64,000 nucleotides of DNA from Phyllobates terribilis (Eukaryota). The stretch spans positions 115,382,001 to 115,446,000 of the forward strand of contig NW_027362773.1 of the NCBI RefSeq assembly GCF_046119375.1, given 5' to 3'. The notes beneath the pieces were generated by a model. That model was not told the DNA's origin and searched no databases. It was given only the letters and a program-made list of their open reading frames with translations. Of the stretch, positions 2,276 to 28,652 are shown one piece after another. The position numbers and the translations under genes were made by a program. Numbering within the stretch: position 1 is the stretch's first letter; each line of letters starts with the position of its first letter.

Positions 2276-2290
2276 CGGACTGTTCCCTTT

Positions 2291-2592: not shown

Positions 2593-2658
2593 AAGCTCCT
2601 ATCACCGTGGAGTCTTTACGGGTCACCACAACATAATCGTCCGATACCACATCCAATG

Positions 2659-3430: not shown

Positions 3431-3990
3431 GAGGGAGTGAGGCGTCCAAGCGCAGCTGATAGCTGATAGCGGAATGCTGCTCACTGGTGGGTGACCATGG
3501 CGGTCAGGGAGTTCGGAGGCTTCAGGACGGCGCTTATAAACAGCCTGTATAATGGAGGCCCTGCTGCTGGCTTCTCTGACTTCAACTAGGACTATAGTAA
3601 AATGTATCACCAGAGATGTAGGTCGGGCTCACACGTGACCCATGAATAAGGACTAGTGTCAATCCCAAACGCGTCAGCGTCATACACACCTTCAGTTTTT
3701 ATGACTTTTTTTTTATTTAATAAATTTGTTTTTTTGACTTACTGAGGATTTTCTGTTAGGTGCTGGACTTTGGTTTTTCCGGTTTCTCTGTTGCCTCCGT
3801 CGGGGGTCACACATTTCGCGGTCCGTGTACAGATCGCACAGCCTTCTAGACGTATATGAGGCGTTACGTTCGGATCGGGAGACCTGCGCTTAGTATACAG
3901 ACCGGGAAATGCGATCCTGGCCTTAGACTGGTTTCAGATGTCCGTGTTTCATAGCCGAGTACCCAGGCAATGATGCATGGACCGACCGCT

Positions 3991-6900
3991 GGTGTCCTGA
4001 CCCAGGCTCGGCAGTCTCATGGCCTTGGGTCTCCTGACCCAGGCTCTGCAATCTCATGGCCTGGGTCTCCTGACCCAGGATCGGCAGTCTCATGGCCGTG
4101 GGTCTCCTGACCCAGGCTCGGCAGTCTCATGGCCGCGGGTCTCCTGACCCAGGCACAGCAGTCTCATGGCCGTGGGTCTCCTGACCCAGTCTCGGCAGTC
4201 TCATGACCGCGGGTCTCCTGAGCCAGGCTCGGCAGTCTCATGACCGCGGGTCTCCTGAGCCAGGCTCGGCAATCTCATGGCCCTGGGTCTCCTGACCCAG
4301 GCTCTGCAATCTCATGGCCGTGGGTCTCCTGACCCAGGCTCTGCAGTCTCATGACCGCGGGTCTCCTGACCCAGGCTCAGCAGTCCCATCGCCGCGGGTC
4401 TCCTGACCCAGGCTCGGCAGCCCCATGGCCGCGGGTCTCCTGACACAAGCTCTGCATTCCCATGGCCACGGGTCTGCTGACCCAAGCCCTGAAGTCCCAT
4501 GGTCGCGGGTCTCCTGACCCAGGCTTGGCAGTCTCATGGCCGTGGGTCTCCTGACCCAGGCTCGGCAGTCTCATGGCCGTGGGTCTCCTGACCCATGCTC
4601 GGCAGTCTCATGGCCGCGGGTCTCCTGACCCAGGCTCGGCAGTCCCATGGCCGCGGGTCTCCTGACCCAGGCTCGGCAGTTCCATGGCCGCGGGTCTCCT
4701 GACCCAGGCTCGGCAGTCCCATGACCGCGGGTCTCCTGACCCAAACTCGGCAGTCCCATGGCCGCGGGTCTCGTGACCCATGCTCGGCAGTCTCATGGCC
4801 CCGGGTCTCCTGACCCAGGCTCGGCAGTCTCGTGGCCGCGGGTCTCCTGACCCAGGCTCAGCAGTCTCATGGCCGCGGGTCTCCTGACCCAGGCTCAGCA
4901 GTCTCATGGCCGCTGGTCTCCTGACCTAGGCTTGGCAATCCAATTGCCGCAGGTCTCCTGACCCAGGCTCGGCAGTCCCATGGTCGCGGGTCTCCTGACA
5001 CAAGCTCTACATTCCCATGGCCACGGGTCTGCTGACCCAAGCTCTGAAGTCCCATGGTCGCTGGTCTTCTGACCCATGCTCGGCAATCTCATGGTCGCGG
5101 GATTCCTGACCTTTGCTTGGCAATCCCATGGCCACGGGTCTGCTGACCCAAGCTCTGAAGTCCCATGGTCGCGGGTGTTCTGACCCAAGCTTGGCAGTCC
5201 CATGGCCACGGATCTCCTGACCCAGGCTCGGCAATCCCATGGTCGTGGGACTCCTGACCCATGCTCGGCAGGCCCATGGTCGCAGGTCTTCTGACCCAGG
5301 CTTGGCAGTCCTATGGTCGCGGGTCTCCTGACCCAGGCTCGGCAGTCCCATGGTCGCGAGTCTTCTGACCCAGGCTCGGCAGTCTCATGGCCGTGGGTCT
5401 CCTGACCCAGGCTCGGCAGTCTCATGGCCGTGGGTCTCCTGACTCAGGCTCGGCAGTCTCATGGCCGCGGGTCTCCTGACCCAAGCTCGGCAGTCTCATG
5501 GCCCCGGGTCTCCTGACCCAGGCTCGGCAGTCTCATGGCCGCGGGTCTCCTGACCCAGGCTCAGCAGTCTCATGGCTGCTGGTCTCCTGACCCAGGCTCG
5601 GCAATCCAATTGCCGCAGGTCTCCTGACCCAGGCTCGGCAGTCCCATGGTCGTGGGTCTCCTGACACAAGCTCTGCATTCCCATGGCCACGGGTCTGCTG
5701 ACCCAAGCTCTGAAGTCCCATGGTCGCGGGTCTCCTGACCCAGGCTCAGCAGTCTCATGGCCGCGGGTCTCCTGACCCAAGCTCGGCAGTCTCATGGCCC
5801 CGGGTCTCCTGACCCAGGCTCGGCAGTCTCATGGCCGCGGGTCTCCTGACCCAGGCTCAGCAGTCTCATGGCCGCTGGTCTCCTGACCTAGGCTTGGCAA
5901 TCCAATTGCCGCAGGTCTCCTGACCCAGGCTCGGCAGTCCCATGGTCGCGGGTCTCCTGACACAAGCTCTACATTCCCATGGCCACGGGTCTGCTGACCC
6001 AAGCTCTGAAGTCCCATGGTCGCTGGTCTTCTGACCCATGCTCGGCAATCTCATGGTCGCGGGATTCCTGACCTTTGCTTGGCAGTCCCATGGCCACGGG
6101 TCTGCTGACCCAAGCTCTGAAGTCCCATGGTCGCGGGTGTTCTGACCCAAGCTTGGCAGTCCCATGGCCACGGATCTCCTGACCCAGGCTCGGCAATCCC
6201 ATGGTCGTGGGACTCCTGACCCATGCTCGGCAGGCCCATGGTCGCAGGTCTTCTGACCCAGGCTTGGCAGTCCTATGGTCGCGGGTCTCCTGACCCAGGC
6301 TCGGCAGTCCCATGGTCGCGAGTCTTCTGACCCAGGCTCGGCAGTCTCATGGCCGTGGGTCTCCTGACCCAGGCTCGGCAGTCTCATGGCCCCGGGTCTC
6401 CTGACCCAGGCTCGGCAGTCTCATGGCCGCGGGTCTCCTGACCCAAGCTCGGCAGTCTCATGGCCGCGGGTCTCCTGACCCAGGCTCAGCAGTCTCATGG
6501 CCGCTGGTCTCCTGACCCAGGCTCGGCAATCCAATTGCCGCAGGTCTCCTGACCCAGGCTCGGCAATCCAATTGCCGCAGGTCTCCTGACCCAGGCTCGG
6601 CAGTCCCATGGTCGTGGGTCTCCTGACACAAGCTCTGCATTCCCATGGCCACGGGTCTGCTGACCCAAGCTCTGAAGTCCCATGGTCGCGGGTCTCCTGA
6701 CCCAGGCTTGGCAGTCTCATGGCCCCGGGTCTCCTGACCCAGGCTCGGCAGTCTCATGGCCGCGAGTCTCCTGACCCAGGCTCAGCAGTCTCATGGCCGC
6801 GGGTCTCCTGACCCAAGCTCGGCAGTCTCATGGCCCTGGGTCTCCTGACCCAGGCTCGGCAGTCTCTTGGCCGCGGGTCTCCTGACCCAGGCTCAGCAGT

Positions 6901-9900
6901 CTCATGGCCGCTGGTCTCCTGAGCCAGGCTCGGCAATCCAATTGCCGCAGGTCTCCTGACCCAGGCTCGGCAGTCCCATGGTCGTGGGTCTCCTGACACA
7001 AGCTCTGCATTCCCATGGCCACGGGTCTGCTGACCCAAGCTCTGAAGTCCCATGGTCGCAGGTCTCCTGACCCAGGCTTGGCAGTCTCATGGCCATGGGT
7101 CTCCTGACCCAGGCTCGGCAGTCTCATGGCCGTGGGTCTCCTGACCCAGGCTCGGCAGTCTCATGGCCGCGGGTCTCCTGACCCAGGCTCAGCAGTCTCA
7201 TGGCCGCAGGTCTCCTGACCCAGGCTCAGCAGTCTCATGGCCGCTGGTCTCCTGACCCAGGCTTGGCAATCCAATTGCCGCAGGTCTCCTGACCCAGGCT
7301 CGGCAGTCCCATGGTCGCGGGTCTCCTGACACAAGCTCTGCATTCCCATGGCCACGTGTCTGCTGACCCAAGCTCTGAAGTCCCATGGTCGCGGGTCTTC
7401 TGACCCAGGCTCGGCAATCTCATGGTCGCTGGATTCCTGACCTATGCTTGGCAGTCCCATGGCCACGGGTCTGCTGATCCAAGCTCTGAAGTCCCATGGT
7501 CGCGGGTGTTCTGACCCAAGCTTGGCAGTCCCATGGCCACGGATCTCCTGACCCAGGCTCGGCAATCCCATGGTCGTGGGACTCCTGACCCATGCTCGGC
7601 AGGCCCATGGTTGCAGGTCTTCTGACCCAGGCTTGGCAGTCCTATGGTCACGGGTCTCCTGACCCAGGCTCGGCAGTCCCATGGTCGCGGGTCTTCTGAC
7701 CCAGGCTCGGCAGTCTCATGGCCGTGGGTCTCCTGACCCAGGCTCGGCAGTCTCATGGCCCCGGGTCTCCTGACCCAGGCTCGGCAGTCTCATGGCCGCG
7801 GGTCTCCTGACCCAGGCTCAGCAGTCTCATGGCCGCGGGTCTCCTGACCCAGGCTCAGCAGTCTCATGGCCGCTGGTCTCCTGACCCAGGCTCGGCAATC
7901 CAATTGCCGCAGGTCTCCTGACCCAGGCTCGGCAATCCAATTGCCGCAGGTCTCCTGACCCAGGCTCGGCAGTCCCATGGTCGTGGGTCTCCTGACACAA
8001 GCTCTGCATTCCCATGGCCACGGGTCTGCTGACCCAAGCTCTGAAGTCCCATGGTCGCGGGTCTCCTGACCCAGGCTCTGCAGTCTCATGGCCGCTGGTC
8101 TCCTGACCCAGGCTCGGCAATCCAATTGCCGCAGGTCTCCTGACCCAGGCTCGGCAGTCCCATGGTCGTGGGTCTCCTGACACAAGCTCTGCATTCCCAT
8201 GGCCACGGGTCTGCTGACCCAAGCTCTGAAGTCCCATGGTCGCAGGTCTCCTGACCCAGGCTTGGCAGTCTCATGGCCATGGGTCTCCTGACCCAGGCTC
8301 GGCAGTCTCATGGCCGTGGGTCTCCTGACCCAGGCTCGGCAGTCTCATGGCCGCGGGTCTCCTGACCCAGGCTCAGCAGTCTCATGGCCGCGGGTCTCCT
8401 GACCCAGGCTCAGCAGTCTCATGGCCGCTGGTCTCCTGACCCAGGCTTGGCAATCCAATTGCCGCAGGTCTCCTGACCCAGGCTCGGCAGTCCCATGGTC
8501 GCGGGTCTCCTGACACAAGCTCTGCATTCCCATGGCCACGTGTCTGCTGACCCAAGCTCTGAAGTCCCATGGTCGCGGGTCTTCTGACCCAGGCTCGGCA
8601 ATCTCATGGTCGCGGGATTCCTGACCTATGCTTGGCAGTCCCATGGCCACGGGTCTGCTGACCCAAGCTCTGAAGTCCCATGGTCGCGGGTGTTCTGACC
8701 CAAGCTTGGCAGTCCCATGGCCACGGATCTCCTGACCCAGGCTCGGCAATCCCATGGTCGTGGGACTCCTGACCCATGCTCGGCAGGCCCATGGTTGCAG
8801 GTCTTCTGACCCAGGCTTGGCAGTCCTATGGTCACGGGTCTTCTGACCCAGGCTCGGCAGTCCCATGGCCGTGGGTCTCCTGACCCAGGCTCGGCAGTCT
8901 CATGGCCCCGGGTCTCCTGACCCAGGCTCGGCAGTCTCATGGCCGCGGGTCTCCTGACCCAGGCTCAGCAGTCTCATGGCCGCGGGTCTCCTGACCCAGG
9001 CTCAGCAGTCTCATGGCCGCTGGTCTCCTGACCCAGGCTCGGCAATCCAATTGCCGCAGGTCTCCTGACCCAGGCTCGGCAATCCAATTGCCGCAGGTCT
9101 CCTGACCCAGGCTCGGCAGTCCCATGGTCGTGGGTCTCCTGACACAAGCTCTGCATTCCCATGGCCACGGGTCTGCTGACCCAAGCTCTGAAGTCCCATG
9201 GTCGCGGGTCTCCTGACCCAGGCTCTGCAGTCTCATGGCCGCTGGTCTCCTGACCCAGGCTCGGCAATCCAATTGCCGCAGGTCTCCTGACCCAGGCTCG
9301 GCAGTCCCATGGTCGTGGGTCTCCTGACACAAGCTCTGCATTCCCATGGCCACGGGTCTGCTGACCCAAGCTCTGAAGTCCCATGGTCGCAGGTCTCCTG
9401 ACCCAGGCTTGGCAGTCTCATGGCCATGGGTCTCCTGACCCAGGCTCGGCAGTCTCATGGCCGTGGGTCTCCTGACCCAGGCTCGGCAGTCTCATGGCCG
9501 CGGGTCTCCTGACCCAGGCTCAGCAGTCTCATGGCCGCGGGTCTCCTGACCCAGGCTCAGCAGTCTCATGGCCGCTGGTCTCCTGACCCAGGCTTGGCAA
9601 TCCAATTGCCGCAGGTCTCCTGACCCAGGCTCGGCAGTCCCATGGTCGCGGGTCTCCTGACACAAGCTCTGCATTCCCATGGCCACGTGTCTGCTGACCC
9701 AAGCTCTGAAGTCCCATGGTCGCGGGTCTTCTGACCCAGGCTCGGCAATCTCATGGTCGCGGGATTCCTGACCTATGCTTGGCAGTCCCATGGCCACGGG
9801 TCTGCTGACCCAAGCTCTGAAGTCCCATGGTCGTGGGTGTTCTGACCCAAGCTTGGCAGTCCCATGGCCACGGATCTCCTGACCCAGGCTCGGCAATCCC

Positions 9901-12900
9901 ATGGTCGTGGGACTCCTGACCCATGCTCGGCAGGCCCATGGTTGCAGGTCTTCTGACCCAGGCTTGGCAGTCCTATGGTCACGGGTCTCCTGACCCAGGC
10001 TCGGCAGTCCCATGGTCGCGGGTCTTCTGACCCAGGCTCGGCAGTCTCATGGCCGTGGGTCTCCTGACCCAGGCTCGGCAGTCTCATGGCCCCGGGTCTC
10101 CTGACCCAGGCTCGGCAGTCTCATGGCCGCGGGTCTCCTGACCCAGGCTCAGCAGTCTCATGGCCGCGGGTCTCCTGACCCAGGCTCAGCAGTCTCATGG
10201 CCGCTGGTCTCCTGACCCAGGCTCGGCAATCCAATTGCCGCAGGTCTCCTGACCCAGGCTCGGCAATCCAATTGCCGCAGGTCTCCTGACCCAGGCTCGG
10301 CAGTCCCATGGTCGTGGGTCTCCTGACACAAGCTCTGCATTCCCATGGCCACGGGTCTGCTGACCCAAGCTCTGAAGTCCCATGGTCGCGGGTCTCCTGA
10401 CCCAGGCTCTGCAGTCTCATGGCCGCTGGTCTCCTGACCCAGGCTCGGCAATCCAATTGCCGCAGGTCTCCTGACCCAGGCTCGGCAGTCCCATGGTCGT
10501 GGGTCTCCTGACACAAGCTCTGCATTCCCATGGCCACGGGTCTGCTGACCCAAGCTCTGAAGTCCCATGGTCGCAGGTCTCCTGACCCAGGCTTGGCAGT
10601 CTCATGGCCATGGGTCTCCTGACCCAGGCTCGGCAGTCTCATGGCCGTGGGTCTCCTGACCCAGGCTCGGCAGTCTCATGGCCGCGGGTCTCCTGACCCA
10701 GGCTCAGCAGTCTCATGGCCGCGGGTCTCCTGACCCAGGCTCAGCAGTCTCATGGCCGCTGGTCTCCTGACCCAGGCTTGGCAATCCAATTGCCGCAGGT
10801 CTCCTGACCCAGGCTCGGCAGTCCCATGGTCGCGGGTCTCCTGACACAAGCTCTGCATTCCCATGGCCACTTGTCTGCTGACCCAAGCTCTGAAGTCCCA
10901 TGGTCGCGGGTCTTCTGACCCAGGCTCGGCAATCTCATGGTCGCGGGATTCCTGACCTATGCTTGGCAGTCCCATGGCCACGGGTCTGCTGACCCAAGCT
11001 CTGAAGTCCCATGGTCGTGGGTGTTCTGACCCAAGCTTGGCAGTCCCATGGCCACGGATCTCCTGACCCAGGCTCGGCAATCCCATGGTCGTGGGACTCC
11101 TGACCCATGCTCGGCAGGCCCATGGTTGCAGGTCTTCTGACCCAGGCTTGGCAGTCCTATGGTCACGGGTCTCCTGACCCAGGCTCGGCAGTCCCATGGT
11201 CGCGGGTCTTCTGACCCAGGCTCGGCAGTCTCATGGCCGTGGGTCTCCTGACCCAGGCTCGGCAGTCTCATGGCCCCGGGTCTCCTGACCCAGGCTCGGC
11301 AGTCTCATGGCCGCGGGTCTCCTGACCCAGGCTCAGCAGTCTCATGGCCGCGGGTCTCCTGACCCAGGCTCAGCAGTCTCATGGCCGCTGGTCTCCTGAC
11401 CCAGGCTCGGCAATCCAATTGCCGCAGGTCTCCTGACCCAGGCTCGGCAGTCCCATGGTCGTGGGTCTCCTGACACAAGCTCTGCATTCCCATGGCCACG
11501 GGTCTGCTGACCCAAGCTCTGAAGTCCCATGGTCGCGGGTCTCCTGACCCAGGCTTGGCAGTCTCATGGCCATGGGTCTCCTGACCCAGGCTCGACAGTC
11601 TCATGGCCGTGGGTCTCCTGACCCAGGCTCGGCAGTCTCATGGCCGTTGGTCTCCTGACCCAGGCTCGGCAGTCTCATTGCCGCGGGTCTCCTGACCCAG
11701 GCTCGGCAGTCCCATGGCCGCGGGTCTCCTGACCCAGGCTCGGCAGTCCCATGGCCGCGGGTCTCCTGACTCAAGCTCGGCAGTCCCATGGCCGCGGGTC
11801 TCCTGACCCAAGCTCGGCAGTCTCATGGCCCCGGGTCTCCTGACCCAGGCTCGGCAGTCTCATGGCCGCGGGTCTCCTGACCCAGGCTCGGCAGTCTCAT
11901 GGCCGCGGGTCTCCTGACCCAGGCTCAGCAGTCACATGGCCGCTGGTCTCCTGACCCAGGCTCGGCAATCCAATTGCCGCAGGTCTCCTGACCCAGGCTC
12001 GGCAGTCCCATGGTCGCGGGTCTCCTGACACAAGCTCTGCATTCCCATGGCCACGGGTCTGCTGACCCAAGCTCTGAAGTCCCATGGTCGCGGGTCTTCT
12101 GACCCAGGCTCGGCAATCTCATGGTCGCAGGATTCCTGACCAATGCTTGGCAGTCCAATGGCCACGGGTCTGCTGACCCAAGCTCTGAAGTCCCATGGTC
12201 GCGGGTGTTCTGACCCAAGCTTGGCAGTCCCATGGCCACGGATCTCCTGACCCAGGCTCGGCAATCCCATGGTCGTGGGACTCCTGACCCATGCTCGGCA
12301 GGCCCATGGTCGCAGGTCTTCTGACCCAGGCTTGGCAGTCCTATGGTCACGGGTCTCCTGACCCAGGCTTGGCAGTCCCATGGTCACGGGTCTTCTGACC
12401 CAGGCTCGGCAGTCTCATGACCGTGGGTCTCCTGACCCAGGCTCGGCAGTCCCATGGCCGCGGGTCTCCTGACCCAAGCTCGGCAGTCCCATGGCCGCGG
12501 GTCTCGTGACCCATGCTCGGCAGTCTCATGGCCCCGGGTCTCCTGACCCAGGCTCGGCAGTCTCATGGCCGCGGGTCTCCTGACCCAGGCTCAGCAGTCT
12601 CATGGCCGCGGGTCTCCTGACCCAGGCTCAGCAGTCTCATGGCCGCTGGTCTCCTGACCCAGGCTTGGCAATCCAATTGCCGCAGGTCTCCTGACCCAGG
12701 CTCGGCAGTCCCATGGTCGCGGGTCTCCTGACACAAGCTCTGCATTCCCATGGCCACGGGTCTGCTGACCCAAGCTCTGAAGTCCCATGGTCGCGGGTCT
12801 TCTGACCCATGCTCGGCAATCTCATGGTCGCGGGATTCCTGACCTTTGCTTGGCAGTCCCATGGCCACGGGTCTGCTGACCCAAGCTCTGAAGTCCCATG

Positions 12901-15900
12901 GTCGCGGGTGTTCTGACCCAAGCTTGGCAGTCCCATGGCCACGGATCTCCTGACCCAGGCTCGGCAATCCCATGGTCGTGGGACTCCTGACCCATGCTCG
13001 GCAGGCCCATGGTCGCAGGTCTTCTGACCCAGGCTTGGCAGTCCTATGGTCGCGGGTCTCCTGACCCAGGCTCGGCAGTCCCATGGTCGCGGGTCTTCTG
13101 ACCCAGGCTCGGCAGTCTCATGGCCGTGGGTCTCCTGAACCAGGCTCGGCAGTCTCATGGCCGTGGGTCTCCTGACCCAGGCTCGGCAGTCTCATGGCCG
13201 CGGGTCTCCTGACCCAAGCTCGGCAGTCTCATGGCCCCGGGTCTCCTGACCCAGGCTCGGCAGTCTCATGGCCGCGGGTCTCCTGACCCAGGCTCAGCAG
13301 TCTCATGGCCGCGGGTCTCCTGACCCAGGCTCAGCAGTCTCATGGCCGCTGGTCTCCTGACACAGGCTCGGCAATCCAATTGCCGCAGGTCTCCTGACCC
13401 AGGCTCAGCAGTCCCATGGTCGTGGGTCTCCTGACACAAGCTCTGCATTCGCATGGCCACGGGTCTGCTGACCCAAGCTCTGAAGTCCCATGGTCGTGGG
13501 TCTCCTGACCCAGGCTTGGCAGTCTCATGGCCATGGGTCTCCTGACCCAGGCTCGGCAGTCTCATGGCCGTGGGTCTCCTGACCCAGGCTCGGCAGTCTC
13601 ATGGCCGCGGGTCTCCTGACCGAGGCTCAGCAGTCTCATGGCCGCGGGTCTCCTGACCCAGGCTCAGCAGTCTCATGGCCGCTGGTCTCCTGACCCAGGC
13701 TTGGCAATCAAATTACCGCAGGTCTCCTGACCCAGGCTCGGCAGTCCCATGGTCGTGGGTCTCCTGACACAAGCTCTGCATTCCCATGGCCATGGGTCTG
13801 CTGACCCAAGCTCTGAAGTCCCATGGTCGCGGGTCTCCTGACCCAGGCTCAGCAGTCTCATGGCCGCTGGTCTCCTGACTCAGGCTCGGCAATCCAATTG
13901 CCGCAGGTCTCCTGACCCAGGCTCGGCAGTCCCATGGTCGTGGGTCTCCTGACACAAGCTCTGCATTCCCATGGCCACGGGTCTGCTGACCCAAGCTCTG
14001 AAGTCCCATGGTCGCAGGTCTCCTGAACCAGGCTTGGCAGTCTCATGGCCATGGGTCTCCTGACCCAGGCTCGGCAGTCTCATGGCCGCGGGTCTCCTGA
14101 CCCAGGCTCAGCAGTCTCATGGCCGCGGGTCTCCTGACCCAGGCTCAGCAGTCTCATGGCCGCTGGTCTCCTGACCCAGGCTCGGCAATCCAATTGCCGC
14201 AGGTCTCCTGACCCAGGCTCGGCAATCCAATTGCCGCAGGTCTCCTGACCCAGGCTCGGCAGTCCCATGGTCGTGGGTCTCCTGACACAAGCTCTGCATT
14301 CCCATGGCCACGGGTCTGCTGACCCAAGCTCTGAAGTCCCATGGTCGCGGGTCTCCTGACCCAGGCTCTGCAGTCTCATGGCCGCTGGTCTCCTGACCCA
14401 GGCTCGGCAATCCAATTGCCGCAGGTCTCCTGACCCAGGCTCGGCAGTCCCATGGTCGTGGGTCTCCTGACACAAGCTCTGCATTCCCATGGCCACGGGT
14501 CTGCTGACCCAAGCTCTGAAGTCCCATGGTCGCAGGTCTCCTGACCCAGGCTTGGCAGTCTCATGGCCATGGGTCTCCTGACCCAGGCTCGGCAGTCTCA
14601 TGGCCGTGGGTCTCCTGACCCAGGCTCGGCAGTCTCATGGCCGCGGGTCTCCTGACCCAGGCTCAGCAGTCTCATGGCCGCGGGTCTCCTGACCCAGGCT
14701 CAGCAGTCTCATGGCCGCGGGTCTCCTGACCCAGGCTCAGCAGTCTCATGGCCGCGGGTCTCCTGACCCAGGCTTGGCAATCCAATTGCCGCAGGTCTCC
14801 TGACCCAGGCTCGGCAGTCCCATGGTCGCGGGTCTCCTGACACAAGCTCTGCATTCCCATGGCCACGTGTCTGCTGACCCAAGCTCTGAAGTCCCATGGT
14901 CGCGGGTCTTCTGACCCAGGCTCGGCAATCTCATGGTCGCGGGATTCCTGACCTATGCTTGGCAGTCCCATGGCCACGGGTCTGCTGACCCAAGCTCTGA
15001 AGTCCCATGGTCGCGGGTGTTCTGACCCAAGCTTGGCAGTCCCATGGCCACGGATCTCCTGACCCAGGCTCGGCAATCCCATGGTCGTGGGACTCCTGAC
15101 CCATGCTCGGCAGGCCCATGGTTGCAGGTCTTCTGACCCAGGCTTGGCAGTCCTATGGTCACGGGTCTCCTGACCCAGGCTCGGCAGTCCCATGGTCGCG
15201 GGTCTTCTGACCCAGGCTCGGCAGTCTCATGGCCGTGGGTCTCCTGACCCAGGCTCGGCAGTCTCATGGCCCCGGGTCTCCTGACCCAGGCTCGGCAGTC
15301 TCATGGCCGCGGGTCTCCTGACCCAGGCTCAGCAGTCTCATGGCCGCGGGTCTCCTGACCCAGGCTCAGCAGTCTCATGGCCGCTGGTCTCCTGACCCAG
15401 GCTCGGCAATCCAATTGCCGCAGGTCTCCTGACCCAGGCTCGGCAATCCAATTGCCGCAGGTCTCCTGACCCAGGCTTGGCAGTCCCATGGTCGTGGGTC
15501 TCCTGACACAAGCTCTGCATTCCCATGGCCACGGGTCTGCTGACCCAAGCTCTGAAGTCCCATGGTCGCGGGTCTCCTGACCCAGGCTCTGCAGTCTCAT
15601 GGCCGCTGGTCTCCTGACCCAGGCTCGGCAATCCAATTGCCGCAGGTCTCCTGACCCAGGCTCGGCAGTCCCATGGTCGTGGGTCTCCTGACACAAGCTC
15701 TGCATTCCCATGGCCACGGGTCTGCTGACCCAAGCTCTGAAGTCCCATGGTCGCAGGTCTCCTGACCCAGGCTTGGCAGTCTCATGGCCATGGGTCTCCT
15801 GACCCAGGCTCGGCAGTCTCATGGCCGTGGGTCTCCTGACCCAGGCTCGGCAGTCTCATGGCCGCGGGTCTCCTGACCCAGGCTCAGCAGTCTCATGGCC

Positions 15901-18900: not shown

Positions 18901-21900
18901 GGTCTTCTGACCCAGGCTCGGCAATCTCATGGTCGCGGGATTCCTGACCTATGCTTGGCAGTCCCATGGCCACGGGTCTGCTGACCCAAGCTCTGAAGTC
19001 CCATGGTCGCGGGTGTTCTGACCCAAGCTTGGCAGTCCCATGGCCACGGATCTCCTGACCCAGGCTCGGCAATCCCATGGTCGTGGGACTCCTGACCCAT
19101 GCTTGGCAGGCCCATGGTTGCAGGTCTTCTGACCCAGGCTTGGCAGTCCTATGGTCACGGGTCTCCTGACCCAGGCTCGGCAGTCCCATGGTCGCGGGTC
19201 TTCTGACCCAGGCTCGGCAGTCTCATGGCCGTGGGTCTCCTGACCCAGGCTCGGCAGTCTCATGGCCCCGGGTCTCCTGACCCAGGCTCGGCAGTCTCAT
19301 GGCCGCGGGTCTCCTGACCCAGGCTCAGCAGTCTCATGGCCGCGGGTCTCCTGACCCAGGCTCAGCAGTCTCATGGCCGCTGGTCTCCTGACCCAGGCTC
19401 GGCAATCCAATTGCCGCAGGTCTCCTGACCCAGGCTCGGCAATCCAATTGCCGCAGGTCTCCTGACCCAGGCTCGGCAGTCCCATGGTCGTGGGTCTCCT
19501 GACACAAGCTCTGCATTCCCATGGCCACGGGTCTGCTGACCCAAGCTCTGAAGTCCCATGGTCGCGGGTCTCCTGACCCAGGCTTGGCAGTCTCATGGCC
19601 ATGGGTCTCCTGACCCAGGCTCGACAGTCTCATGGCCGTGGGTCTCCTGACCCAGGCTCGGCAGTCTCATGGCCGTGGGTCTCCTGACCCAGGCTCGGCA
19701 GTCTCATTGCCGCGGGTCTCCTGACCCAGGCTCGGCAGTCCCATGGCCGCGGGTCTCCTGACCCAGGCTCGGCAGTCCCATGGCCGCGGGTCTCCTGACT
19801 CAAGCTCGGCAGTCCCATGGCCGCGGGTCTCCTGACCCAAGCTCGGCAGTCTCATGGCCCCGGGTCTCCTGACCCAGGCTCGGCAGTCTCATGGCCGCGG
19901 GTCTCCTGACCCAGGCTCGGCAGTCTCATGGCCGCGGGTCTCCTGACCCAGGCTCAGCAGTCACATGGCCGCTGGTCTCCTGACCCAGGCTCGGCAATCC
20001 AATTGCCGCAGGTCTCCTGACCCAGGCTCGGCAGTCCCATGGTCGCGGGTCTCCTGACACAAGCTCTGCATTCCCATGGCCACGGGTCTGCTGACCCAAG
20101 CTCTGAAGTCCCATGGTCGCGGGTCTTCTGACCCAGGCTCGGCAATCTCATGGTCGCAGGATTCCTGACCAATGCTTGGCAGTCCAATGGCCACGGGTCT
20201 GCTGACCCAAGCTCTGAAGTCCCATGGTCGCGGGTGTTCTGACCCAAGCTTGGCAGTCCCATGGCCACGGATCTCCTGACCCAGGCTCGGCAATCCCATG
20301 GTCGTGGGACTCCTGACCCATGCTCGGCAGGCCCATGGTCGCAGGTCTTCTGACCCAGGCTTGGCAGTCCTATGGTCACGGGTCTCCTGACCCAGGCTCG
20401 GCAGTCCCATGGTCACGGGTCTTCTGACCCAGGCTCGGCAGTCTCATGACCGTGGGTCTCCTGACCCAGGCTCGGCAGTCCCATGGCCGCGGGTCTCCTG
20501 ACCCAAGCTCGGCAGTCCCATGGCCGCGGGTCTCGTGACCCATGCTCGGCAGTCTCATGGCCCCGGGTCTCCTGACCCAGGCTCGGCAGTCTCATGGCCG
20601 CGGGTCTCCTGACCCAGGCTCAGCAGTCTCATGGCCGCGGGTCTCCTGACCCAGGCTCAGCAGTCTCATGGCCGCTGGTCTCCTGACCCAGGCTTGGCAA
20701 TCCAATTGCCGCAGGTCTCCTGACCCAGGCTCGGCAGTCCCATGGTCGCGGGTCTCCTGACACAAGCTCTGCATTCCCATGGCCACGGGTCTGCTGACCC
20801 AAGCTCTGAAGTCCCATGGTCGCGGGTCTTCTGACCCATGCTCGGCAATCTCATGGTCGCGGGATTCCTGACCTTTGCTTGGCAGTCCCATGGCCACGGG
20901 TCTGCTGACCCAAGCTCTGAAGTCCCATGGTCGCGGGTGTTCTGACCCAAGCTTGGCAGTCCCATGGCCACGGATCTCCTGACCCAGGCTCGGCAATCCC
21001 ATGGTCGTGGGACTCCTGACCCATGCTCGGCAGGCCCATGGTCGCAGGTCTTCTGACCCAGGCTTGGCAGTCCTATGGTCGCGGGTCTCCTGACCCAGGC
21101 TCGGCAGTCCCATGGTCGCGGGTCTTCTGACCCAGGCTCGGCAGTCTCATGGCCGTGGGTCTCCTGAACCAGGCTCGGCAGTCTCATGGCCGTGGGTCTC
21201 CTGACCCAGGCTCGGCAGTCTCATGGCCGCGGGTCTCCTGACCCAAGCTCGGCAGTCTCATGGCCCCGGGTCTCCTGACCCAGGCTCGGCAGTCTCATGG
21301 CCGCGGGTCTCCTGACCCAGGCTCAGCAGTCTCATGGCCGCGGGTCTCCTGACCCAGGCTCAGCAGTCTCATGGCCGCGGGTCTCCTGACCCAGGCTCAG
21401 CAGTCTCATGGCCGCTGGTCTCCTGACCCAGGCTCGGCAATCCAATTGCCGCAGGTCTCCTGACCCAGGCTCAGCAGTCCCATGGTCGTGGGTCTCCTGA
21501 CACAAGCTCTGCATTCGCATGGCCACGGGTCTGCTGACCCAAGCTCTGAAGTCCCATGGTCGTGGGTGTCCTGACCCAGGCTTGGCAGTCTCATGGCCAT
21601 GGGTCTCCTGACCCAGGCTCGGCAGTCTCATGGCCGTGGGTCTCCTGACCCAGGCTCGGCAGTCTCATGGCCGCGGGTCTCCTGACCCAGGCTCAGCAGT
21701 CTCATGGCCGCGGGTCTCCTGACCCAGGCTCAGCAGTCTCATGGCCGCTGGTCTCCTGACCCAGGCTTGGCAATCAAATTACCGCAGGTCTCCTGACCCA
21801 GGCTCGGCAGTCCCATGGTCGTGGGTCTCCTGACACAAGCTCTGCATTCCCATGGCCACGGGTCTGCTGACCCAAGCTCTGAAGTCCCATGGTCGCGGGT

Positions 21901-24900
21901 CTCCTGACCCAGGCTCAGCAGTCTCATGGCCGCTGGTCTCCTGACTCAGGCTCGGCAATCCAATTGCCGCAGGTCTCCTGACCCAGGCTCGGCAGTCCCA
22001 TGGTCGTGGGTCTCCTGACACAAGCTCTGCATTCCCATGGCCACGGGTCTGCTGACCCAAGCTCTGAAGTCCCATGGTCGCATGTCTCCTGACCCAGGCT
22101 TGGCAGTCTCATGGCCATGGGTCTCCTGACCCAGGCTCGGCAGTCTCATGGCCGTGGGTCTCCTGACCCAGGCTCGGCAGTCTCATGGCCGCGGGTCTCC
22201 TGACCCAGGCTCAGCAGTCTCATGGCCGCGGGTCTCCTGACCCAGGCTCAGCAGTCTCATGGCCGCTGGTCTCCTGACCCAGGCTTGGCAATCCAATTGC
22301 CGCAGGTCTCCTGACCCAGGCTCGGCAGTCCCATGGTCGCGGGTCTCCTGACACAAGCTCTGCATTCCCATGGCCACGTGTCTGCTGACCCAAGCTCTGA
22401 AGTCCCATGGTCGCGGGTCTTCTGACCCAGGCTCGGCAATCTCATGGTCGCGGGATTCCTGACCTATGCTTGGCAGTCCCATGGCCACGGGTCTGCTGAC
22501 CCAAGCTCTGAAGTCCCATGGTCGCGGGTGTTCTGACCCAAGCTTGGCAGTCCCATAGCCACGGATCTCCTGACCCAGGCTCGGCAATCCCATGGTCGTG
22601 GGACTCCTGACCCATGCTTGGCAGGCCCATGGTTGCAGGTCTTCTGACCCAGGCTTGGCAGTCCTATGGTCACGGGTCTCCTGACCCAGGCTCGGCAGTC
22701 CCATGGTCGCGGGTCTTCTGACCCAGGCTCGGCAGTCTCATGGCCGTGGGTCTCCTGACCCAGGCTCGGCAGTCTCATGGCCCCGGGTCTCCTGACCCAG
22801 GCTCGGCAGTCTCATGGCCGCGGGTCTCCTGCCCCAGGCTCAGCAGTCTCATGGCCGCGGGTCTCCTGACCCAGGCTCAGCAGTCTCATGGCCGCTGGTC
22901 TCCTGACCCAGGCTCGGCAATCCAATTGCCGCAGGTCTCCTGACCCAGGCTCGGCAATCCAATTGCCGCAGGTCTCCTGACCCAGGCTCGGCAGTCCCAT
23001 GGTCGTGGGTCTCCTGACACAAGCTCTGCATTCCCATGGCCACGGGTCTGCTGACCCAAGCTCTGAAGTCCCATGGTCGCGGGTCTCCTGACCCAGGCTT
23101 GGCAGTCTCATGGCCATGGGTCTCCTGACCCAGGCTCGACAGTCTCATGGCCGTGGGTCTCCTGACCCAGGCTCGGCAGTCTCATGGCCGTGGGTCTCCT
23201 GACCCAGGCTCGGCAGTCTCATGGCCGCGGGTCTCCTGACCCAGGCTCGGCAGTCCCATGGCCGCGGGTCTCCTGACCCAGGCTCGGCAGTCCCATGGCC
23301 GCGGGTCTCCTGACTCAAGCTCGGCAGTCCCATGGCCGCGGGTCTCCTGACCCAAGCTCGGCAGTCTCATGGCCCCGGGTCTCCTGACCCAGGCTCGGCA
23401 GTCTCATGGCCGCGGGTCTCCTGACCCAGGCTCGGCAGTCTCATGGCCGCGGGTCTCCTGACCAAGGCTCAGCAGTCACATGGCCGCTGGTCTCCTGACC
23501 CAGGCTCGGCAATCCAATTGCCGCAGGTCTCCTGACCCAGTCTCGGCAGTCCCATGGTCGCGGGTCTCCTGACACAAGCTCTGCATTCCCATGGCCACGG
23601 GTCTGCTGACCCAAGCTCTGAAGTCCCATGGTCGCGGGTCTTCTGACCCAGGCTCGGCAATCTCATGGTCGCAGGATTCCTGACCAATGCTTGGCAGTCC
23701 AATGGCCACGGGTCTGCTGACCCAAGCTCTGAAGTCCCATGGTCGCGGGTGTTCTGACCCAAGCTTGGCAGTCCCATGGCCACGGATCTCCTGACCCAGG
23801 CTCGGCAATCCTATGGTCGTGGGACTCCTGACCCATGCTCGGCAGGCCCATGGTCGCAGGTTTTCTGACCCAGGCTTGGCAGTCCTATGGTCACGGGTCT
23901 CCTGACCCAGGCTCGGCAGTCCCATGGTCACGGGTCTTCTGACCCAGGCTCGGCAGTCTCATGACCGTGGGTCTCCTGACCCAGGCTCGGCAGTCCCATG
24001 GCCGCGGGTCTCCTGACCCAAGCTCGGCAGTCCCATGGCCGCGGGTCTCGTGACCCATGCTCGGCAGTCTCATGGCCCCGGGTCTCCTGACCCAGGCTCG
24101 GCAGTCTCATGGCCGCGGGTCTCCTGACCCAGGCTCAGCAGTCTCATGGCCGCGGGTCTCCTGACCCAGGCTCAGCAGTCTCATGGCCGCTGGTCTCCTG
24201 ACCCAGGCTTGGCAATCCAATTGCCTCAGGTCTCCTGACCCAGGCTCGGCAGTCCCATGGTCGCGGGTCTCCTGACACAAGCTCTGCATTCCCATGGCCA
24301 CGGGTCTGCTGACCCAAGCTCTGAAGTCCCATGGTCGCGGGTCTTCTGACCCATGCTCGGCAATCTCATGGTCGCGGGATTCCTGACCTTTGCTTGGCAG
24401 TCCCATGGCCACGGGTCTGCTGACCCAAGCTCTGAAGTCCCATGGTCGCGGGTGTTCTGACCCAAGCTTGGCAGTCCCATGGCCACGGATCTCCTGACCC
24501 AGGCTCGGCAATCCCATGGTCGTGGGACTCCTGACCCATGCTCGGCAGGCCCATGGTCGCAGGTCTTCTGACCCAGGCTTGGCAGTCCTATGGTCGCGGG
24601 TCTCCTGACCCAGGCTCGGCAGTCCCATGGTCGCGGGTCTTCTGACCCAGGCTTGGCAGTCTCATGGCCGTGGGTCTCCTGAACCAGGCTCGGCAGTCTC
24701 ATGGCCGTGGGTCTCCTGACCCAGGCTCTGCAGTCTCATGGCCGCGGGTCTCCTGACCCAAGCTCGGCAGTCTCATGGCCCCGGGTCTCCTGACCCAGGC
24801 TCGGCAGTCTCATGGCCGCGGGTCTCCTGACCCAGGCTCAGCAGTCTCATGGCCGCGGGTCTCCTGACCCAGGCTCAGCAGTCTCATGGCCGCTGGTCTC

Positions 24901-27900
24901 CTGACCCAGGCTCGGCAATCCAATTGCCGCAGGTCTCCTGACCCAGGCTCAGCAGTCCCATGGTCGTGGGTCTCCTGACACAAGCTCTGCATTCGCATGG
25001 CCACGGGTCTGCTGACCCAAGCTCTGAAGTCCCATGATCGTGGGTCTCCTGACCCAGGCTTGGCAGTCTCATGGCCATGGGTCTCCTGACCCAGGCTCGG
25101 CAGTCTCATGGCCGTGGGTCTCCTGACCCAGGCTCGGCAGTCTCATGGCCGCGGGTCTCCTGACCCAGGCTCAGCAGTCTCATGGCCGCGGGTCTCCTGA
25201 CCCAGGCTCAGCAGTCTCATGGCCGCTGGTCTCCTGACCCAGGCTTGGCAATCAAATTACCGCAGGTCTCCTGACCCAGGCTCGGCAGTCCCATGGTCGC
25301 GGGTCTCCTGACACAAGCTCTGCATTCCCATGGCCACGTGTCTGCTGACCCAAGCTCTGAAGTCCCATGGTCGCAGGTCTTCTGACCCAGGCTCGGCAAT
25401 CTCATGGTCGCGGGATTCCTGACCTATGCTTGGCAGTCCCATGGCCACGGGTCTGCTGACCCAAGCTCTGAAGTCCCATAGTCGCGGGTGTTCTGACCCA
25501 AGCTTGGCAGTCCCATGGCCACGGATCTCCTGACCCAGGCTCGGCAATCCCATGGTCGTGGGACTCCTGACCCATGCTCGGCAGGCCCATGGTCGCAGGT
25601 CTTCTGACCCAGGCTTGGCAGTCCTATGGTCACGGGTCTCCTGACCCAGGCTCGGCAGTCTCATGGCCGTGGGTCTCCTGACCCAGGCTCGGCAGTCTCA
25701 TGGCCCCGGGTCTCCTGACCCAGGCTCGGCAGTCTCATGGCCGCGGGTCTCCTGACCCAGGCTCAGCAGTCTCATGGCCGCGGGTCTCCTGACCCAGGCT
25801 CAGCAGTCTCATGGCCGCTGGTCTCCTGACCCAGGCTCGGCAATCCAATTGCCGCAGGTCTCCTGACCCAGGCTCGGCAATCCAATTGCCGCAGGTCTCC
25901 TGACCCAGGCTCGGCAGTCCCATGGTCGTGGGTCTCCTGACACAAGCTCTGCATTCCCATGGCCACGGGTCTGCTGACCCAAGCTCTGAAGTCCCATGGT
26001 CGCGGGTCTCCTGACCCAGGCTTGGCAGTCTCATGGCCATGGGTCTCCTGACCCAGGCTCGGCAGTCTCATGGCCGTGGGTCTCCTGACCCAGGTTCGGC
26101 AGTCTCATGGCCGTGGGTCTCCTGACCCAGGCTCGGCAGTCTCTTGGCCGCGGGTCTCCTGACCCAGGCTCGGCAGTCCCATGGCCGCGGGTCTCCTGAC
26201 CCAGGCTCGGCAGTCCCATGGCCGCGGGTCTCCTGACCCAAGCTCGGCAGTCTCATGGCCCCGGGTCTCCTGACCCAGGCTCGGCAGTCTCATGGCCGCG
26301 GGTCTCCTGACCCAGGCTCGGCAGTCTCATGGCCGCGGGTCTCCTGACCCAGGCTCAGCAGTCACATGGCCGCTGGTCTCCTGACCCAGGCTCGGCAATC
26401 CAATTGCCGCAGGTCTCCTGACCCAGGCTTGGCAGTCCCATGGTCGCGGGTCTCCTGACACAAGCTCTGCATTCCCATGGCCACGGATCTGCTGACCCAA
26501 GCTCTGAAGTCCCATGGTCGCGGGTCTTCTGACCCAGGCTCGGCAATCTCATGGTCGCAGGATTCCTGACCAATGCTTGGCAGTCCAATGGCCACGGGTC
26601 TGCTAACCCAAGCTCTGAAGTCCCATGGTCGCGGGTGTTCTGACCTAAGCTTGGCAGTCCCATGGCCACGGATCTCCTGACCCAGGCTCGGCAATCCCAT
26701 GGTCGTGGGACTCCTGACCCATGCTCGGCAGGCCCATGGTCGCAGGTCTTCTGACCCAGGCTTGGCAGTCCTATGGTCACGGGTCTCCTGACCCAGGCTC
26801 GGCAGTCCCATGACCGTGGGTCTCCTGACCCAGTCTCGGCAGTCTCATGGCCGTGGGTCTCCTGACCCAGGCTTGGCAGTCTCATGGCCGCGGGTCTCCT
26901 GACCCAGGCTCGGCAGTCCCATGGCCTCGGGTCTCCTGACCCAGGCTCGGCAGTCCCATGGCCGCGGGTCTCCTGACCCAAGCTCGGCAGTCCCATGGCC
27001 ACGGGTTTCCTGACCCAAGCTCGGCAGTCTCATGGCCCCGGGTCTCCTGACCCAGGCTCGGCAGTCTCATGGCCCCGGGTCTCTTGACCCAGGCTCAGCA
27101 GTCCCATGGTCGCGGGTCTCCTGACACAAGCTCAGCATTCCCATGGCCACGGGTCTGCTGACCCAAGCTCTGAAGTCCCATGGTCGCGGGTCTTCTGACC
27201 CAGGCTCGGCAGTCCCATGGTCGCGGGTCTTCTGACCCAGGCTCGGCAGTCTCATGGCCGTGGGTCTCCTGACCCAGGCTCGGCAGTCTCATGGCCGTGG
27301 GTCTCCTGACCCAGGCTCGGCAGTCTCATGGCCGTGGGTCTCCTGACCGCGGGTCTCATGGCCGCGGGTCTCCTGACCCAAGCTCGGCAGTCTCATGGCC
27401 CCGGGTCTCCTGACCCAGGCTCGGCAGTCTCATGGCCGCGGGTCTCCTGACCCAGGCTCAGCAGTCTCATGGCCGCGGGTCTCCTGACTCAGGCTCGGCA
27501 ATCCAATTGCCGCAGGTCTCCTGACCCAAGCTCGGCAGTCCCATGGTCGCGGGTCTCCTGACACAAGCTCTGCATTCCCATGGCCACGGGTCTGCTGACC
27601 CAAGCTCTGAAGTCCCATGGTCGCGGGTCTTCTGACCCAGGCTCGGCAGTCCCATGGCCGCGGGTCTCCTGACCCAGGCTCGGCAGTCTCATGGCCGCGG
27701 GTCTCCTGACCCAGGCTCGGCAATCCAATTGCCGCAGGTCTCCTGACCCAGGCTCGGCAGTCCCATGGCTGCGGGTCTCCTGACCCAAGCTCGGCAGTCT
27801 CATGGCCCCGGGTCTCCTGACCCAGGCTTGGCAGTCTCATGGTCGCGGGTCTCCTGACCCAGGCTCAGCAGTCTCATGGCCGCGGGTCTCCTGACCCAGG

Positions 27901-28652
27901 CTCAGCAGTCTCATGGCCGCTGGTCTCCTGACCCAGGCTCTGCAATCCAATTGCCGCAGGTCTCCTGACCCAGGCTCGGCAGTCCCATGGTCGCGGGTCT
28001 CCTGACCCAGGCTCAGCAGTTCCATGGCCGCAGGTCTCCTGACCCAGGCTCAGCAGTCTCATGGCCGCTGGTCTCCTGACCCAGGCTCGGCAATCCAATT
28101 GCCGCAGGTCTTCTGACCCAGGCTTGGCAGTCCTATGGTCACGGGTCTCCTGACCCAGGCTCGGCAGTCACATGGTCGCGGGTCTTCTGACCCAAGCTCG
28201 GCCGTCCCACGGCCACGGGTCTCCTGACCCAGGCTTGGCAGTCTTATGACCGCGGGTCAGCTCACCCAAGCTCTGCATTTCCATGGTCGCGGGTCTCCTG
28301 ACCCAAGCTCTGCATTCCCATGGTCGCGGGTCTCCTGACACAAGCTCTGCATTCCCATGGTCGCAGGTCTCCTGACACAAGCTCTGCATCCCCATGGCCG
28401 CGGGTCTGCTGACCCAAGCTCTGAAGTCCCATGGTCGCGGGTCTTCTGACCCAGGCTCGGCAGTCCCATGGTCGCGGGTCTTCTGACCCAGGCTCGGCAG
28501 TCCCATGGTCGCGGGTCTTCTGACCCAGGCTTGGCAGTCCCATGGCCTCGGGTCTCCTGACCCAAGCTCGGCAGTCCCATGGCGCGAGTGTCCTGACCCA
28601 GGCTCGGCTGTCCTATGGCCACAGGTCTCCTGATCGGAGCTAGCCAGTCTCA
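3991..28652. repeat. 37-bp GC-rich satellite array (~666 copies) with higher-order repeats
   Basis: Consensus ggtctcctgacccaggctcggcagtctcatggccgcg. Recurrent pseudo-ORFs are offset by exact multiples of 37 (962, 1147, 1184, 2812, 3515, 5217, 8029). Confidence 0.99.

What the first reader, a model, noticed from the sequence alone, without database searches (positions are those of the whole stretch)
3991..28652. 24.7-kb, ~666-copy 37-bp satellite embedded in a housekeeping gene cluster
A macro-array of this size sits ~560 bp from a CpG promoter and ~8 kb from the WDR74 3' end, in a region that is gene-dense in other vertebrates. It is GC- and CpG-rich (CCGCGG in many units), so it could nucleate methylation next to a promoter. 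I do not recognise the monomer as a described satellite, but I cannot search.
Basis: partly seen in the sequence, partly recalled or inferred. Interest (0 to 1): 0.8.

Follow-up and report, generated by a model that had tools for sequence, protein, structure and literature searches.

The report
Young 37-bp satellite beside WDR74
A real 24.7-kb block of about 666 head-to-tail copies of a 37-base unit lies between a CpG-rich, promoter-like island and the WDR74 gene of a frog. It looks like ordinary, recently expanded, non-coding satellite DNA, not a working device.

Summary
TRF finds one array at 3986-28633: 37 bp, 666 copies, 86% identity between neighbouring units, and only three units of odd length. 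WDR74 (minus strand, 3' end about 36.72 kb) and a TMEM223-like exon confirm the gene context. A roughly 1-kb CpG island-like stretch (3001-4000) abuts the array.

The array has higher-order structure. Blocks of 31/32 units and superblocks of 76-141 units are 96-99.9% alike in the centre, and the edges are older and full of one-off variants. Word depth in DNA runs of two individuals corresponds to about 30 and 52 kb of this repeat, so the array is not inflated by assembly and is probably confined to one or a few loci. A second species label also holds it.

The array is GC-rich (64.5%) but not a CpG island (o/e 0.485, like the flanks), and its CpG sites decay three times faster than other sites. 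RNA support is near nil. The monomer is related to a ~40-nt hairpin motif, present as inverted single copies in both flanks and three times in a WDR74 intron.

Best reading: a locus-restricted satellite born in place and grown by unequal exchange, neutral and probably methylated. No paper held prints the monomer. The scan has noted many other satellites in this genome, but not this one.

The parts
3986..28656 (.). 37-bp satellite array, 666 units, all in one orientation (consensus CGCGGGTCTCCTGACCCAGGCTCGGCAGTCCCATGGC on the + strand)
3986..7500 (.). Older left zone: 40% one-off variants in the first 50 units, and only partial higher-order patterns
7501..11500 (.). About 3.3 copies of a 31/32-unit (1.15-1.18 kb) higher-order repeat. 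It contains the longest exact internal repeat, 1036 bp (7504 and 9835).
11539..26200 (.). Superblocks starting at about 11539, 16756, 19568, 23083 and 25969 (spacing 141, 76, 95 and 78 units). Their first 20 units are 96.2-99.9% alike, and the best 40-unit windows are 99.3-99.9% alike.
26200..28656 (.). Older right zone: 36-75% one-off variants. It includes a short 15-bp sub-array at 27323-27378 and the 30-bp unit at 27333.
3851..3891 (-). Single inverted ~40-nt unit in the left flank. It matches the intron unit at 41145-41183 in 30 of 39 positions.
   Evidence: It is not significant against the array HMM itself (E=10).
28663..28703 (-). Single inverted unit just right of the last array unit. 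Together the two form a hairpin.
   Evidence: 27-nt arms, 78% complementary; z = -2.89; nhmmer E = 0.0087
41146..41397 (.). Three related units in a WDR74 intron: 41146-41185 (+), 41324-41364 (+) and 41370-41397 (-). The last two form a unit/inverted-unit hairpin.
   Evidence: (E = 0.0063)
3001..3985 (.). CpG island-like, single-copy promoter-like region (CpG o/e 0.6-1.13) with TGACGTCA, CCGGAAGT and GGGCGG motifs. The gene it would serve was not identified.
   Evidence: Single-copy depth.
36724..45965 (-). WDR74 coding exons, with the 3' end at the left, facing the array
   Evidence: PDB 8fkp_NQ WDR74, residues 172-209 and 258-308, E = 6e-14 and 8e-13
52488..52886 (+). TMEM70/TMEM186/TMEM223-family exon. 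Calling it TMEM223 is an inference from synteny.
   Evidence: E = 7.6e-13

Best explanation
This is a locus-restricted, GC-rich 37-bp satellite (a very long minisatellite) with no sequence-specific function. It arose in place at the edge of a CpG island from a pre-existing ~40-nt hairpin-associated motif. The monomer itself consists of two related 15-mers joined by a 7-nt linker. Replication slippage would have made the first copies. Repeated unequal exchange between misaligned sister chromatids or homologues then duplicated ever larger blocks: 31/32 units, then 76-141 units. That homogenised the centre and left old, diverged units at both edges. The array is non-coding and hardly or not at all transcribed. 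It was probably methylated in the germ line like bulk DNA, while the adjoining CpG island stayed protected. Shown here: the anatomy, the higher-order structure, the edge-to-centre gradient, the relatives of the monomer, the depth-based size, and the presence in several individuals and a second species label. Inferred: the exchange mechanism, the methylation state and neutrality.
For: Array and register. Nested higher-order repeats and near-identical blocks (99.3-99.9% over 40 units, against 86% between neighbouring units). One-off variants make up 40% and 36-75% of units at the edges and 2-10% in the centre. The 22+15 sub-periodicity and the 15-bp sub-array. Relatives of the unit in both flanks and in a WDR74 intron. 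Terminal hairpin. Transitions at CpG sites 14.3% against 4.7% at other sites, and CpG o/e 0.485, no higher than the flanks. The island next door keeps o/e 0.6-1.13. Depth in DNA runs X1 and X5 corresponds to about 30 and 52 kb of the repeat per single-copy depth, and an X1 contig of single-copy depth crosses the left junction (2855-4076). Array words are held by at least five samples of organism A and one of organism B, and RNA-labelled runs hold at most 0.06 of them. No Rfam family and no credible Pfam domain. Frog precedent for satellites expanded by unequal crossing over in GC-rich, recombining regions, many seeded by fragments of other sequence: PMC10794172.
Against: No direct evidence on methylation, chromatin, recombination or length polymorphism. 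The depth figures come from collapsed contigs, and the tool warns that they are not copy numbers. Counts of variant units are not independent events, because block duplication multiplies one mutation, so the threefold CpG excess is only indicative. The whole genome could not be searched, so 'one or a few loci' rests on depth alone. Run X29 (organism B, kind unknown) shows the array at depth 100-450 with unique flanks at 0. That could mean a much larger array there, or an RNA or enriched library.
Confidence: 0.7

Rival explanations
1. The array is the internal tandem-repeat region of a mobile element, such as a fold-back, MITE or Helitron-type element that carries the ~40-nt hairpin motif. On this reading it came with, or grew inside, an inserted copy, as in the hAT- and Helitron-borne arrays noted elsewhere in this genome.
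For: Inverted units bracket the array (3851-3891 and 28663-28703). The same unit/inverted-unit hairpin recurs 12.5 kb away in a WDR74 intron. Earlier notes report transposon-seeded satellites in this genome. PMC10794172 reports TE-derived frog satellites.
Against: The flanks beyond the units show no significant similarity to each other or to the intron element. No transposase, terminal repeats or target-site duplication were found. The left flank at 3601-4000 has single-copy depth in two DNA runs at 90% likeness or more. No further copies of the unit occur in the other 39 kb of the window.
Confidence: 0.15
2. The array is a regulatory or epigenetic element. It could be a block of methylated heterochromatin, a boundary, or a promoter-proximal repressor whose length tunes the adjoining CpG-island promoter or the 3' end of WDR74, in the manner of human MSR1 repeats at PRPF31 or of macrosatellites.
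For: It starts directly at the edge of a CpG island. It carries 5 CpG per 100 bp over 24.7 kb. Depth hints at different lengths in two individuals, 30 against 52 kb-equivalents. In the MSR1 precedent, 3 or 4 copies of a 36-38-bp minisatellite change PRPF31 transcription (PMC4725990).
Against: No position in the unit stands out as protected beyond what CpG decay explains. The unit has no special fold (z = -1.25 and -0.82). The island keeps its CpGs next to the array. The gene served by the island was not found, and the RNA run X10 shows almost nothing there. Such arrays are common in this genome.
Confidence: 0.08
3. The length is an assembly artefact: a short array over-expanded, or copies from elsewhere collapsed into this place.
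For: Tandem arrays are the classic place for such errors. No spanning read could be examined. X1 may be the very sample that was assembled, so it is not independent.
Against: The longest exact internal repeat is 1036 bp and every 1.2-kb window is unique, so reads of a few kb can order the array. The block order is aperiodic and has a natural edge-to-centre gradient. Depth corresponds to about 30 kb in X1 against 24.65 kb assembled, and to about 52 kb in another individual.
Confidence: 0.04
4. The array is expressed: either the stop-poor minus strand encodes a repetitive protein, or it is the source of a long non-coding or small RNA.
For: The minus-strand consensus has no stop codon, which gives dozens of ATG-initiated ORFs of 99-215 aa. 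The RNA run X10 yields one 164-nt contig at depth 3.6 inside the array.
Against: 37 is not a multiple of 3, and the ORFs are cut every 100-215 aa. Pfam returns only low-complexity matches with no significant stretch. RNA-labelled runs hold 0.00-0.06 of the array words. The X10 signal is no higher than in silent flank and may come from contaminating DNA.
Confidence: 0.03

Closest known systems
GC-rich satellite and minisatellite arrays of frog chromosome arms and extended subtelomeres (Xenopus tropicalis v10; PMC10794172)
   Same: Short-unit tandem arrays tens of kb long in GC-rich, gene-containing regions. Their growth is attributed to unequal crossing over, and they are often seeded by a fragment of another sequence. 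The unit carries the TGGG tetramer (1.5 per unit counting both strands), which that paper reports as enriched in such repeats.
   Different: The monomer is not among the sequences in that paper's supplementary files held here. The species is different. The chromosomal position of this window is unknown. AGGG and ACAG, the other tetramers reported as enriched, are absent.
Classical GC-rich hypervariable minisatellites, and MSR1 (36-38 bp, human chromosome 19; PMC4725990)
   Same: Unit length (37 bp), GC-richness, single orientation, a promoter-proximal position, and interspersed variant units suitable for variant-repeat mapping.
   Different: Roughly 666 copies and 24.7 kb with nested higher-order repeats, far longer than the 3-4-copy MSR1 cluster at PRPF31 (PMC4725990) and, from general knowledge, at the upper end for minisatellites. 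MSR1 arose after the bird-mammal split, so it cannot be homologous. No effect on transcription is shown here.
Euchromatic satellite DNAs in gene-rich regions (e.g. Tribolium castaneum Cast families; PMC4675708, PMC11610590)
   Same: Long satellite-type arrays sitting between ordinary genes, not in centromeric heterochromatin.
   Different: Those families have ~170-bp and similar units spread over many loci. By depth, this one appears confined to one or a few loci.
Satellites seeded by functional or mobile sequences in this same genome (earlier notes: arrays derived from the histone 3' signal, and hAT- and Helitron-borne arrays)
   Same: Units of 36-48 bp (the histone-signal arrays), arrays of 9-44 kb, origin from a short pre-existing local motif, and an apparently neutral nature.
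   Different: The seed here is a ~40-nt hairpin motif of unknown nature beside a CpG island, not a histone processing signal or a recognisable transposon. Those notes were not re-tested here.

Membership tests
Satellite DNA with higher-order repeats | Long head-to-tail array of one unit in one orientation | tested here: met
   666 units over 24.7 kb, all on the + strand and none inverted inside the array
Satellite DNA with higher-order repeats | Multi-unit blocks much more alike than neighbouring units | tested here: met
   Blocks 96-99.9% alike, against 86% between neighbouring units
Satellite DNA with higher-order repeats | High genomic abundance at many loci, or heterochromatic or centromeric location | tested here: not met
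   Depth corresponds to only about 30-52 kb per genome. This is a rough measure. Location and chromatin could not be tested.
Minisatellite (GC-rich, hypervariable type) | Unit of 10-100 bp, GC-rich, with interspersed variant units | tested here: met
   37 bp, 64.5% GC, 140 distinct unit variants
Minisatellite (GC-rich, hypervariable type) | Length polymorphism between individuals | tested here: inconclusive
   30 against 52 kb-equivalents in X1 and X5, taken from contig word depth, which the tool warns is not a copy number
CpG island | GC above 50% and CpG observed/expected above 0.6 | tested here: not met
   GC is 64.5% but o/e is 0.485 for the array, ranging 0.445-0.55 in 2.5-kb steps. The adjoining 3001-4000 stretch does meet the criterion.
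Transposon-derived satellite | Unit homologous to part of a recognisable mobile element (terminal repeats, target-site duplication or transposase; many dispersed copies) | tested here: inconclusive
   Related units occur at five other places in the window, but no element boundaries were found and the left flank is single-copy. The genome could not be searched.
RNA-gene-derived satellite (5S, tRNA/SINE, snRNA) | Match of the unit or its relatives to the RNA family model | tested here: not met
   No Rfam match at gathering score. At E up to 10 there are only chance-level miRNA and lncRNA rows. No tRNA.
Human MSR1 minisatellite family | Sequence homology to the MSR1 consensus; mammalian origin | not tested
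   No MSR1 sequence was available to compare. The paper dates MSR1 after the bird-mammal split, so homology is excluded on phylogenetic grounds. It is an analogy only.

The most novel reading that the evidence does not exclude
A young, essentially single-locus higher-order satellite was born from one arm of a short hairpin motif at the edge of a CpG island. It is shared with a sister species and variable in length between individuals. It acts as a length-dependent methylated block or recombination hotspot that modulates the adjoining housekeeping promoter or the 3' end of WDR74. That would make it a frog counterpart of promoter-proximal minisatellite modifiers such as MSR1.
Probability: 0.07. 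Interest if true: 0.55.

Novelty: new member of a known kind. Interest (0 to 1): 0.25.

Why it matters
The result is mainly a clean worked example. The array's seed motif still sits beside it as single inverted copies on both flanks. Its growth history can be read from the old edges inward through nested blocks. Its size is supported by independent depth data. That makes it a convenient locus for studying how long arrays arise in large frog genomes, whose satellite content is not discussed in the two poison-frog genome papers I checked. It also offers a marker for variation between individuals. It does not by itself open a long-standing question. Its position against a CpG island would matter only if array length turned out to affect methylation or expression.

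Tried and rejected
1. Origin from 5S rRNA, tRNA/SINE or snRNA. I saw a few shared 7-mers with 5S from memory, but Rfam gives nothing for the array, the right flank or the intron units, and there is no tRNA. Rejected.
2. Coding repeat on the stop-poor minus strand. Pfam gives only low-complexity hits with no significant stretch. Rejected.
3. The array as a 24-kb CpG island. The o/e of 0.485 fails the criterion.
4. A special fold of the unit. DNA folding gives z-scores of -1.25 and -0.82. Only the terminal unit/inverted-unit hairpin stands out (z = -2.89).
5. Flank-to-flank homology that would mark a transposon. The alignments do not exceed shuffles.
6. A single simple higher-order period. The lag scan shows no single dominant period. 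The structure is nested and aperiodic.
7. Literature. No paper prints any of six 16-mers of the unit. The '37-bp satellite Xenopus' search returned only an unrelated snake paper. The X. tropicalis supplements lack the unit. The two poison-frog genome papers do not mention satellites.
8. A metagenome scan for the 26-nt core gave 0 hits.
9. The scan's own notes, queried by sequence, were blank.
10. The gene served by the CpG island. ORFs on both strands at 1-3990 have no credible Pfam match (one sub-threshold repeat hit only) and RNA run X10 shows no exon there. Left open.
Full report
**Observation.** Tandem Repeats Finder reports a single array at 3986-28633 with period 37, 666.4 copies, 86% matches and score 32895.
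- Self-identity at lag 37 is 0.858, against 0.19-0.34 at lags 30-44.
- A 26-nt core with up to 3 mismatches matches 502 times, where shuffles give none.
- All core matches lie on the + strand inside the array. None lie elsewhere in the window at 6 or fewer substitutions.
- Re-registering the units gives 666 units from 3987 to about 28656, 140 of them distinct. Only three units have an odd length: 36 bp near 4061, 30 bp at 27333, and 36 bp near 28555.
- The window's N runs lie at 58-63 kb, far from the array, and were left alone.

**Internal anatomy.** The unit is compound. A 15-mer (GTCTCCTGACCCAGG), a 7-nt linker and a related 15-mer (GTCTCATGGCCGCGG) explain the 22- and 15-bp periods that TRF reports, and also the short pure 15-bp array at 27323-27378.

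Coding each distinct unit as a letter shows nested higher-order structure.
- A 31/32-unit block (1.15-1.18 kb) is repeated about 3.3 times at 7.5-11.5 kb and appears again at 14.5-16.6 kb.
- Superblocks beginning at about 11539, 16756, 19568, 23083 and 25969 are spaced 141, 76, 95 and 78 units apart.
- The first 20 units of these superblocks are 96.2-99.9% alike.
- The best 40-unit windows at offsets of 63-217 units are 99.3-99.9% alike. Neighbouring units are only 86% alike.
- One-off variants make up 40% of the first 50 units and 36-75% of the last 85, but only 2-10% in the centre.

This is the expected signature of an array homogenised in its middle by repeated unequal exchange of ever larger blocks, with old units stranded at the edges.

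**Is the length real?** The longest exact internal repeat is 1036 bp, and every 1.2-kb window of the array is unique. Reads of a few kb can therefore order it.

I laid the contigs of two DNA runs from different samples on 1-6000.
- Single-copy flank depth was about 12.5 in X1 and 11.8 in X5.
- Mean summed depth over the 2 kb of array offered was 190 and 309.
- If each collapsed contig is laid once, that corresponds to about 30 and 52 kb of this repeat per single-copy depth. The assembled length is 24.65 kb.

The tool warns that such depths are not copy numbers, so these are order-of-magnitude figures. Even so, they exclude a much shorter array. They also argue that the family is not a major genome-wide satellite, and that this locus holds most of it. 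An X1 contig of single-copy depth (9.48) crosses the left junction at 2855-4076. X1 may be the sample that was assembled.

Array words are held by at least five samples of organism A and by one run labelled as a second species, organism B. The organism B contigs of 60-127 nt differ at 0-4 positions.

**Composition and methylation.**
- The array is 64.5% GC with 4.98 CpG per 100 bp. Its CpG observed/expected ratio is 0.485, no higher than the flanks at 0.52-0.55. It is not a CpG island.
- Relative to the consensus, transitions at the three consensus CpG sites run at 14.3% and transitions elsewhere at 4.7%. This fits methyl-CpG decay. Block duplication multiplies single events, so the ratio is only indicative.
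- The single-copy stretch at 3001-4000 has o/e 0.6-1.13 in 200-bp steps, right up to the first unit. The array then falls to 0.38-0.56.
I could not identify the gene it serves.
- The retained CpGs beside the array argue against long-term spreading of germ-line methylation from the array into the island. This is an inference.

**Gene context.**
- Minus-strand ORFs at 41810-42010 and 40572-40880 match human WDR74 (PDB 8fkp_NQ) at residues 172-209 and 258-308, with E = 6e-14 and 8e-13.
- An acidic, lysine-rich ORF at 36724-36900 and an N-terminal-like ORF ending at 45965 read, by my own recall of the human protein and untested, like the two ends of WDR74.
- A TMEM70/186/223-family exon lies at 52488-52886.
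- Dead Tc1/mariner pieces lie at 33.2-33.9, 38.7-39.7 and 47.9-48.5 kb.

**Origin of the unit.** An HMM built from array dimers and run on the window with the array masked finds two relatives.
- A nearly full unit at 41327-41361 in a WDR74 intron (E = 0.0063).
- An inverted unit at 28668-28692, immediately right of the array (E = 0.0087).

Further alignment adds more.
- A second intron unit at 41146-41185.
- An inverted partial unit at 41370-41397, which forms a hairpin with its neighbour.
- An inverted unit in the left flank at 3851-3891. It matches the intron unit in 30 of 39 positions (score 33, against 21.1 ± 2.3 for shuffles). It is not significant against the array model itself (E = 10).

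The shared motif is about 40 nt: ACCGCAGGTCTCCyGACCCAAAC-TACAGcCTCATATA. A model built from the non-array units finds no further copies in the window.

The last array unit and the inverted unit behind it fold as a hairpin, with z = -2.89. The array therefore looks like one arm of a local hairpin motif that was amplified.

Units carrying CCCAAGC (A at position 19 in 163 units) are intermediate between the motif's CCCAAAC and the consensus CCCAGGC. Most differences between the motif and the consensus run from A/T to G/C, by my count on alignment A1. That is compatible with GC-biased conversion, but the count is small.

Whether the motif belongs to a mobile element is open. I found no element boundaries, and the left flank is single-copy.

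**Function.**
- No Rfam family matches the array or its relatives, and there is no tRNA.
- The stop-poor minus strand yields many ORFs of 99-215 aa. Pfam returns only low-complexity matches.
- RNA-labelled runs hold 0.00-0.06 of the array words.
- The RNA run laid here gives one 164-nt contig at depth 3.6, no more than in the silent flank.
- The unit has no unusual fold.

Nothing points to a sequence-specific role.

**Comparison with known systems.** The closest described kind is the GC-rich tandem repeats of frog chromosome arms and extended subtelomeres. Their growth is attributed to unequal crossing over, and many were seeded by fragments of other sequence. In X. tropicalis, 10.67% of the chromosomes lie in tandem arrays (PMC10794172).

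The unit carries TGGG 1.5 times per unit (counting both strands), one of the tetramers that paper found enriched, but not AGGG or ACAG. The paper's supplements do not contain the unit.

By unit length and composition it is a minisatellite. By length and higher-order structure it is a satellite. It fails the abundance criterion of classical satellites.

Human MSR1 (36-38 bp) beside the PRPF31 core promoter is a functional analogue worth keeping in mind, but it cannot be homologous (PMC4725990).

Earlier notes of this scan say the genome is that of a poison frog and list 167 satellite notes in 770 windows. These include 9-44-kb arrays of 36-48-bp units that grew from histone 3' signals, and satellite arrays borne by hAT and Helitron transposons. 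I did not re-test those notes. They lower the surprise of a 25-kb array here and suggested the search for a seed motif.

Most likely (about 0.7) this is a young, locus-restricted, neutral satellite that arose in place from a hairpin motif at the edge of a CpG island and grew by unequal exchange. The rivals are a transposon-internal array (0.15), a length-dependent regulatory or epigenetic element (0.08), assembly inflation (0.04) and an expressed repeat (0.03). It is a new member of a known kind, of modest interest.

Noticed in passing
window 2693-2920: A 30-bp tandem repeat (5-8 copies here, about twice single-copy depth in organism-A DNA runs) has summed contig depth of about 2517 in run X29 of a second species label, where the unique flanks read 0. 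It looks amplified into a satellite, or highly expressed, in the other species. One reading frame gives a weak, sub-threshold hit to Pfam 'Decapeptide repeat'.
   Followed up: no
window 45013-45795: A 49-bp CpG-rich array (16 copies, 97% alike) begins about 20 bp downstream, on the minus strand, of the apparent N-terminal coding exon of WDR74. That places it at the very start of an intron.
   Followed up: partly
window 41146-41397: Three copies of the ~40-nt hairpin motif related to the 37-mer lie inside a WDR74 intron. Two are direct copies 179 bp apart, and the third is an inverted partial copy that forms a 17-nt-arm hairpin.
   Followed up: yes
window 4001-6000 in runs X1 and X5: Array depth relative to flank differs about 1.7-fold between two individuals (30 against 52 kb-equivalents). 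This hints at length polymorphism or extra copies, but contig depth is a poor measure.
   Followed up: partly
window 32296-32666: A GC-rich patch contains 21-, 46- and 51-bp tandem repeats (up to 4 copies, 74-81% alike) between the array and WDR74.
   Followed up: no
window 201-600, 801-1000, 1601-2600: Interspersed repeats with summed depth in the thousands in DNA runs, against about 12 for single-copy DNA. These are young, high-copy transposon families left of the CpG island.
   Followed up: no
window 33225-33923, 38708-39722, 47944-48540: Dead Tc1/mariner transposase pieces (HTH_Tnp_Tc3_2 and DDE_3 domains) lie in the array-WDR74 spacer, in or beside WDR74, and upstream of it.
   Followed up: no
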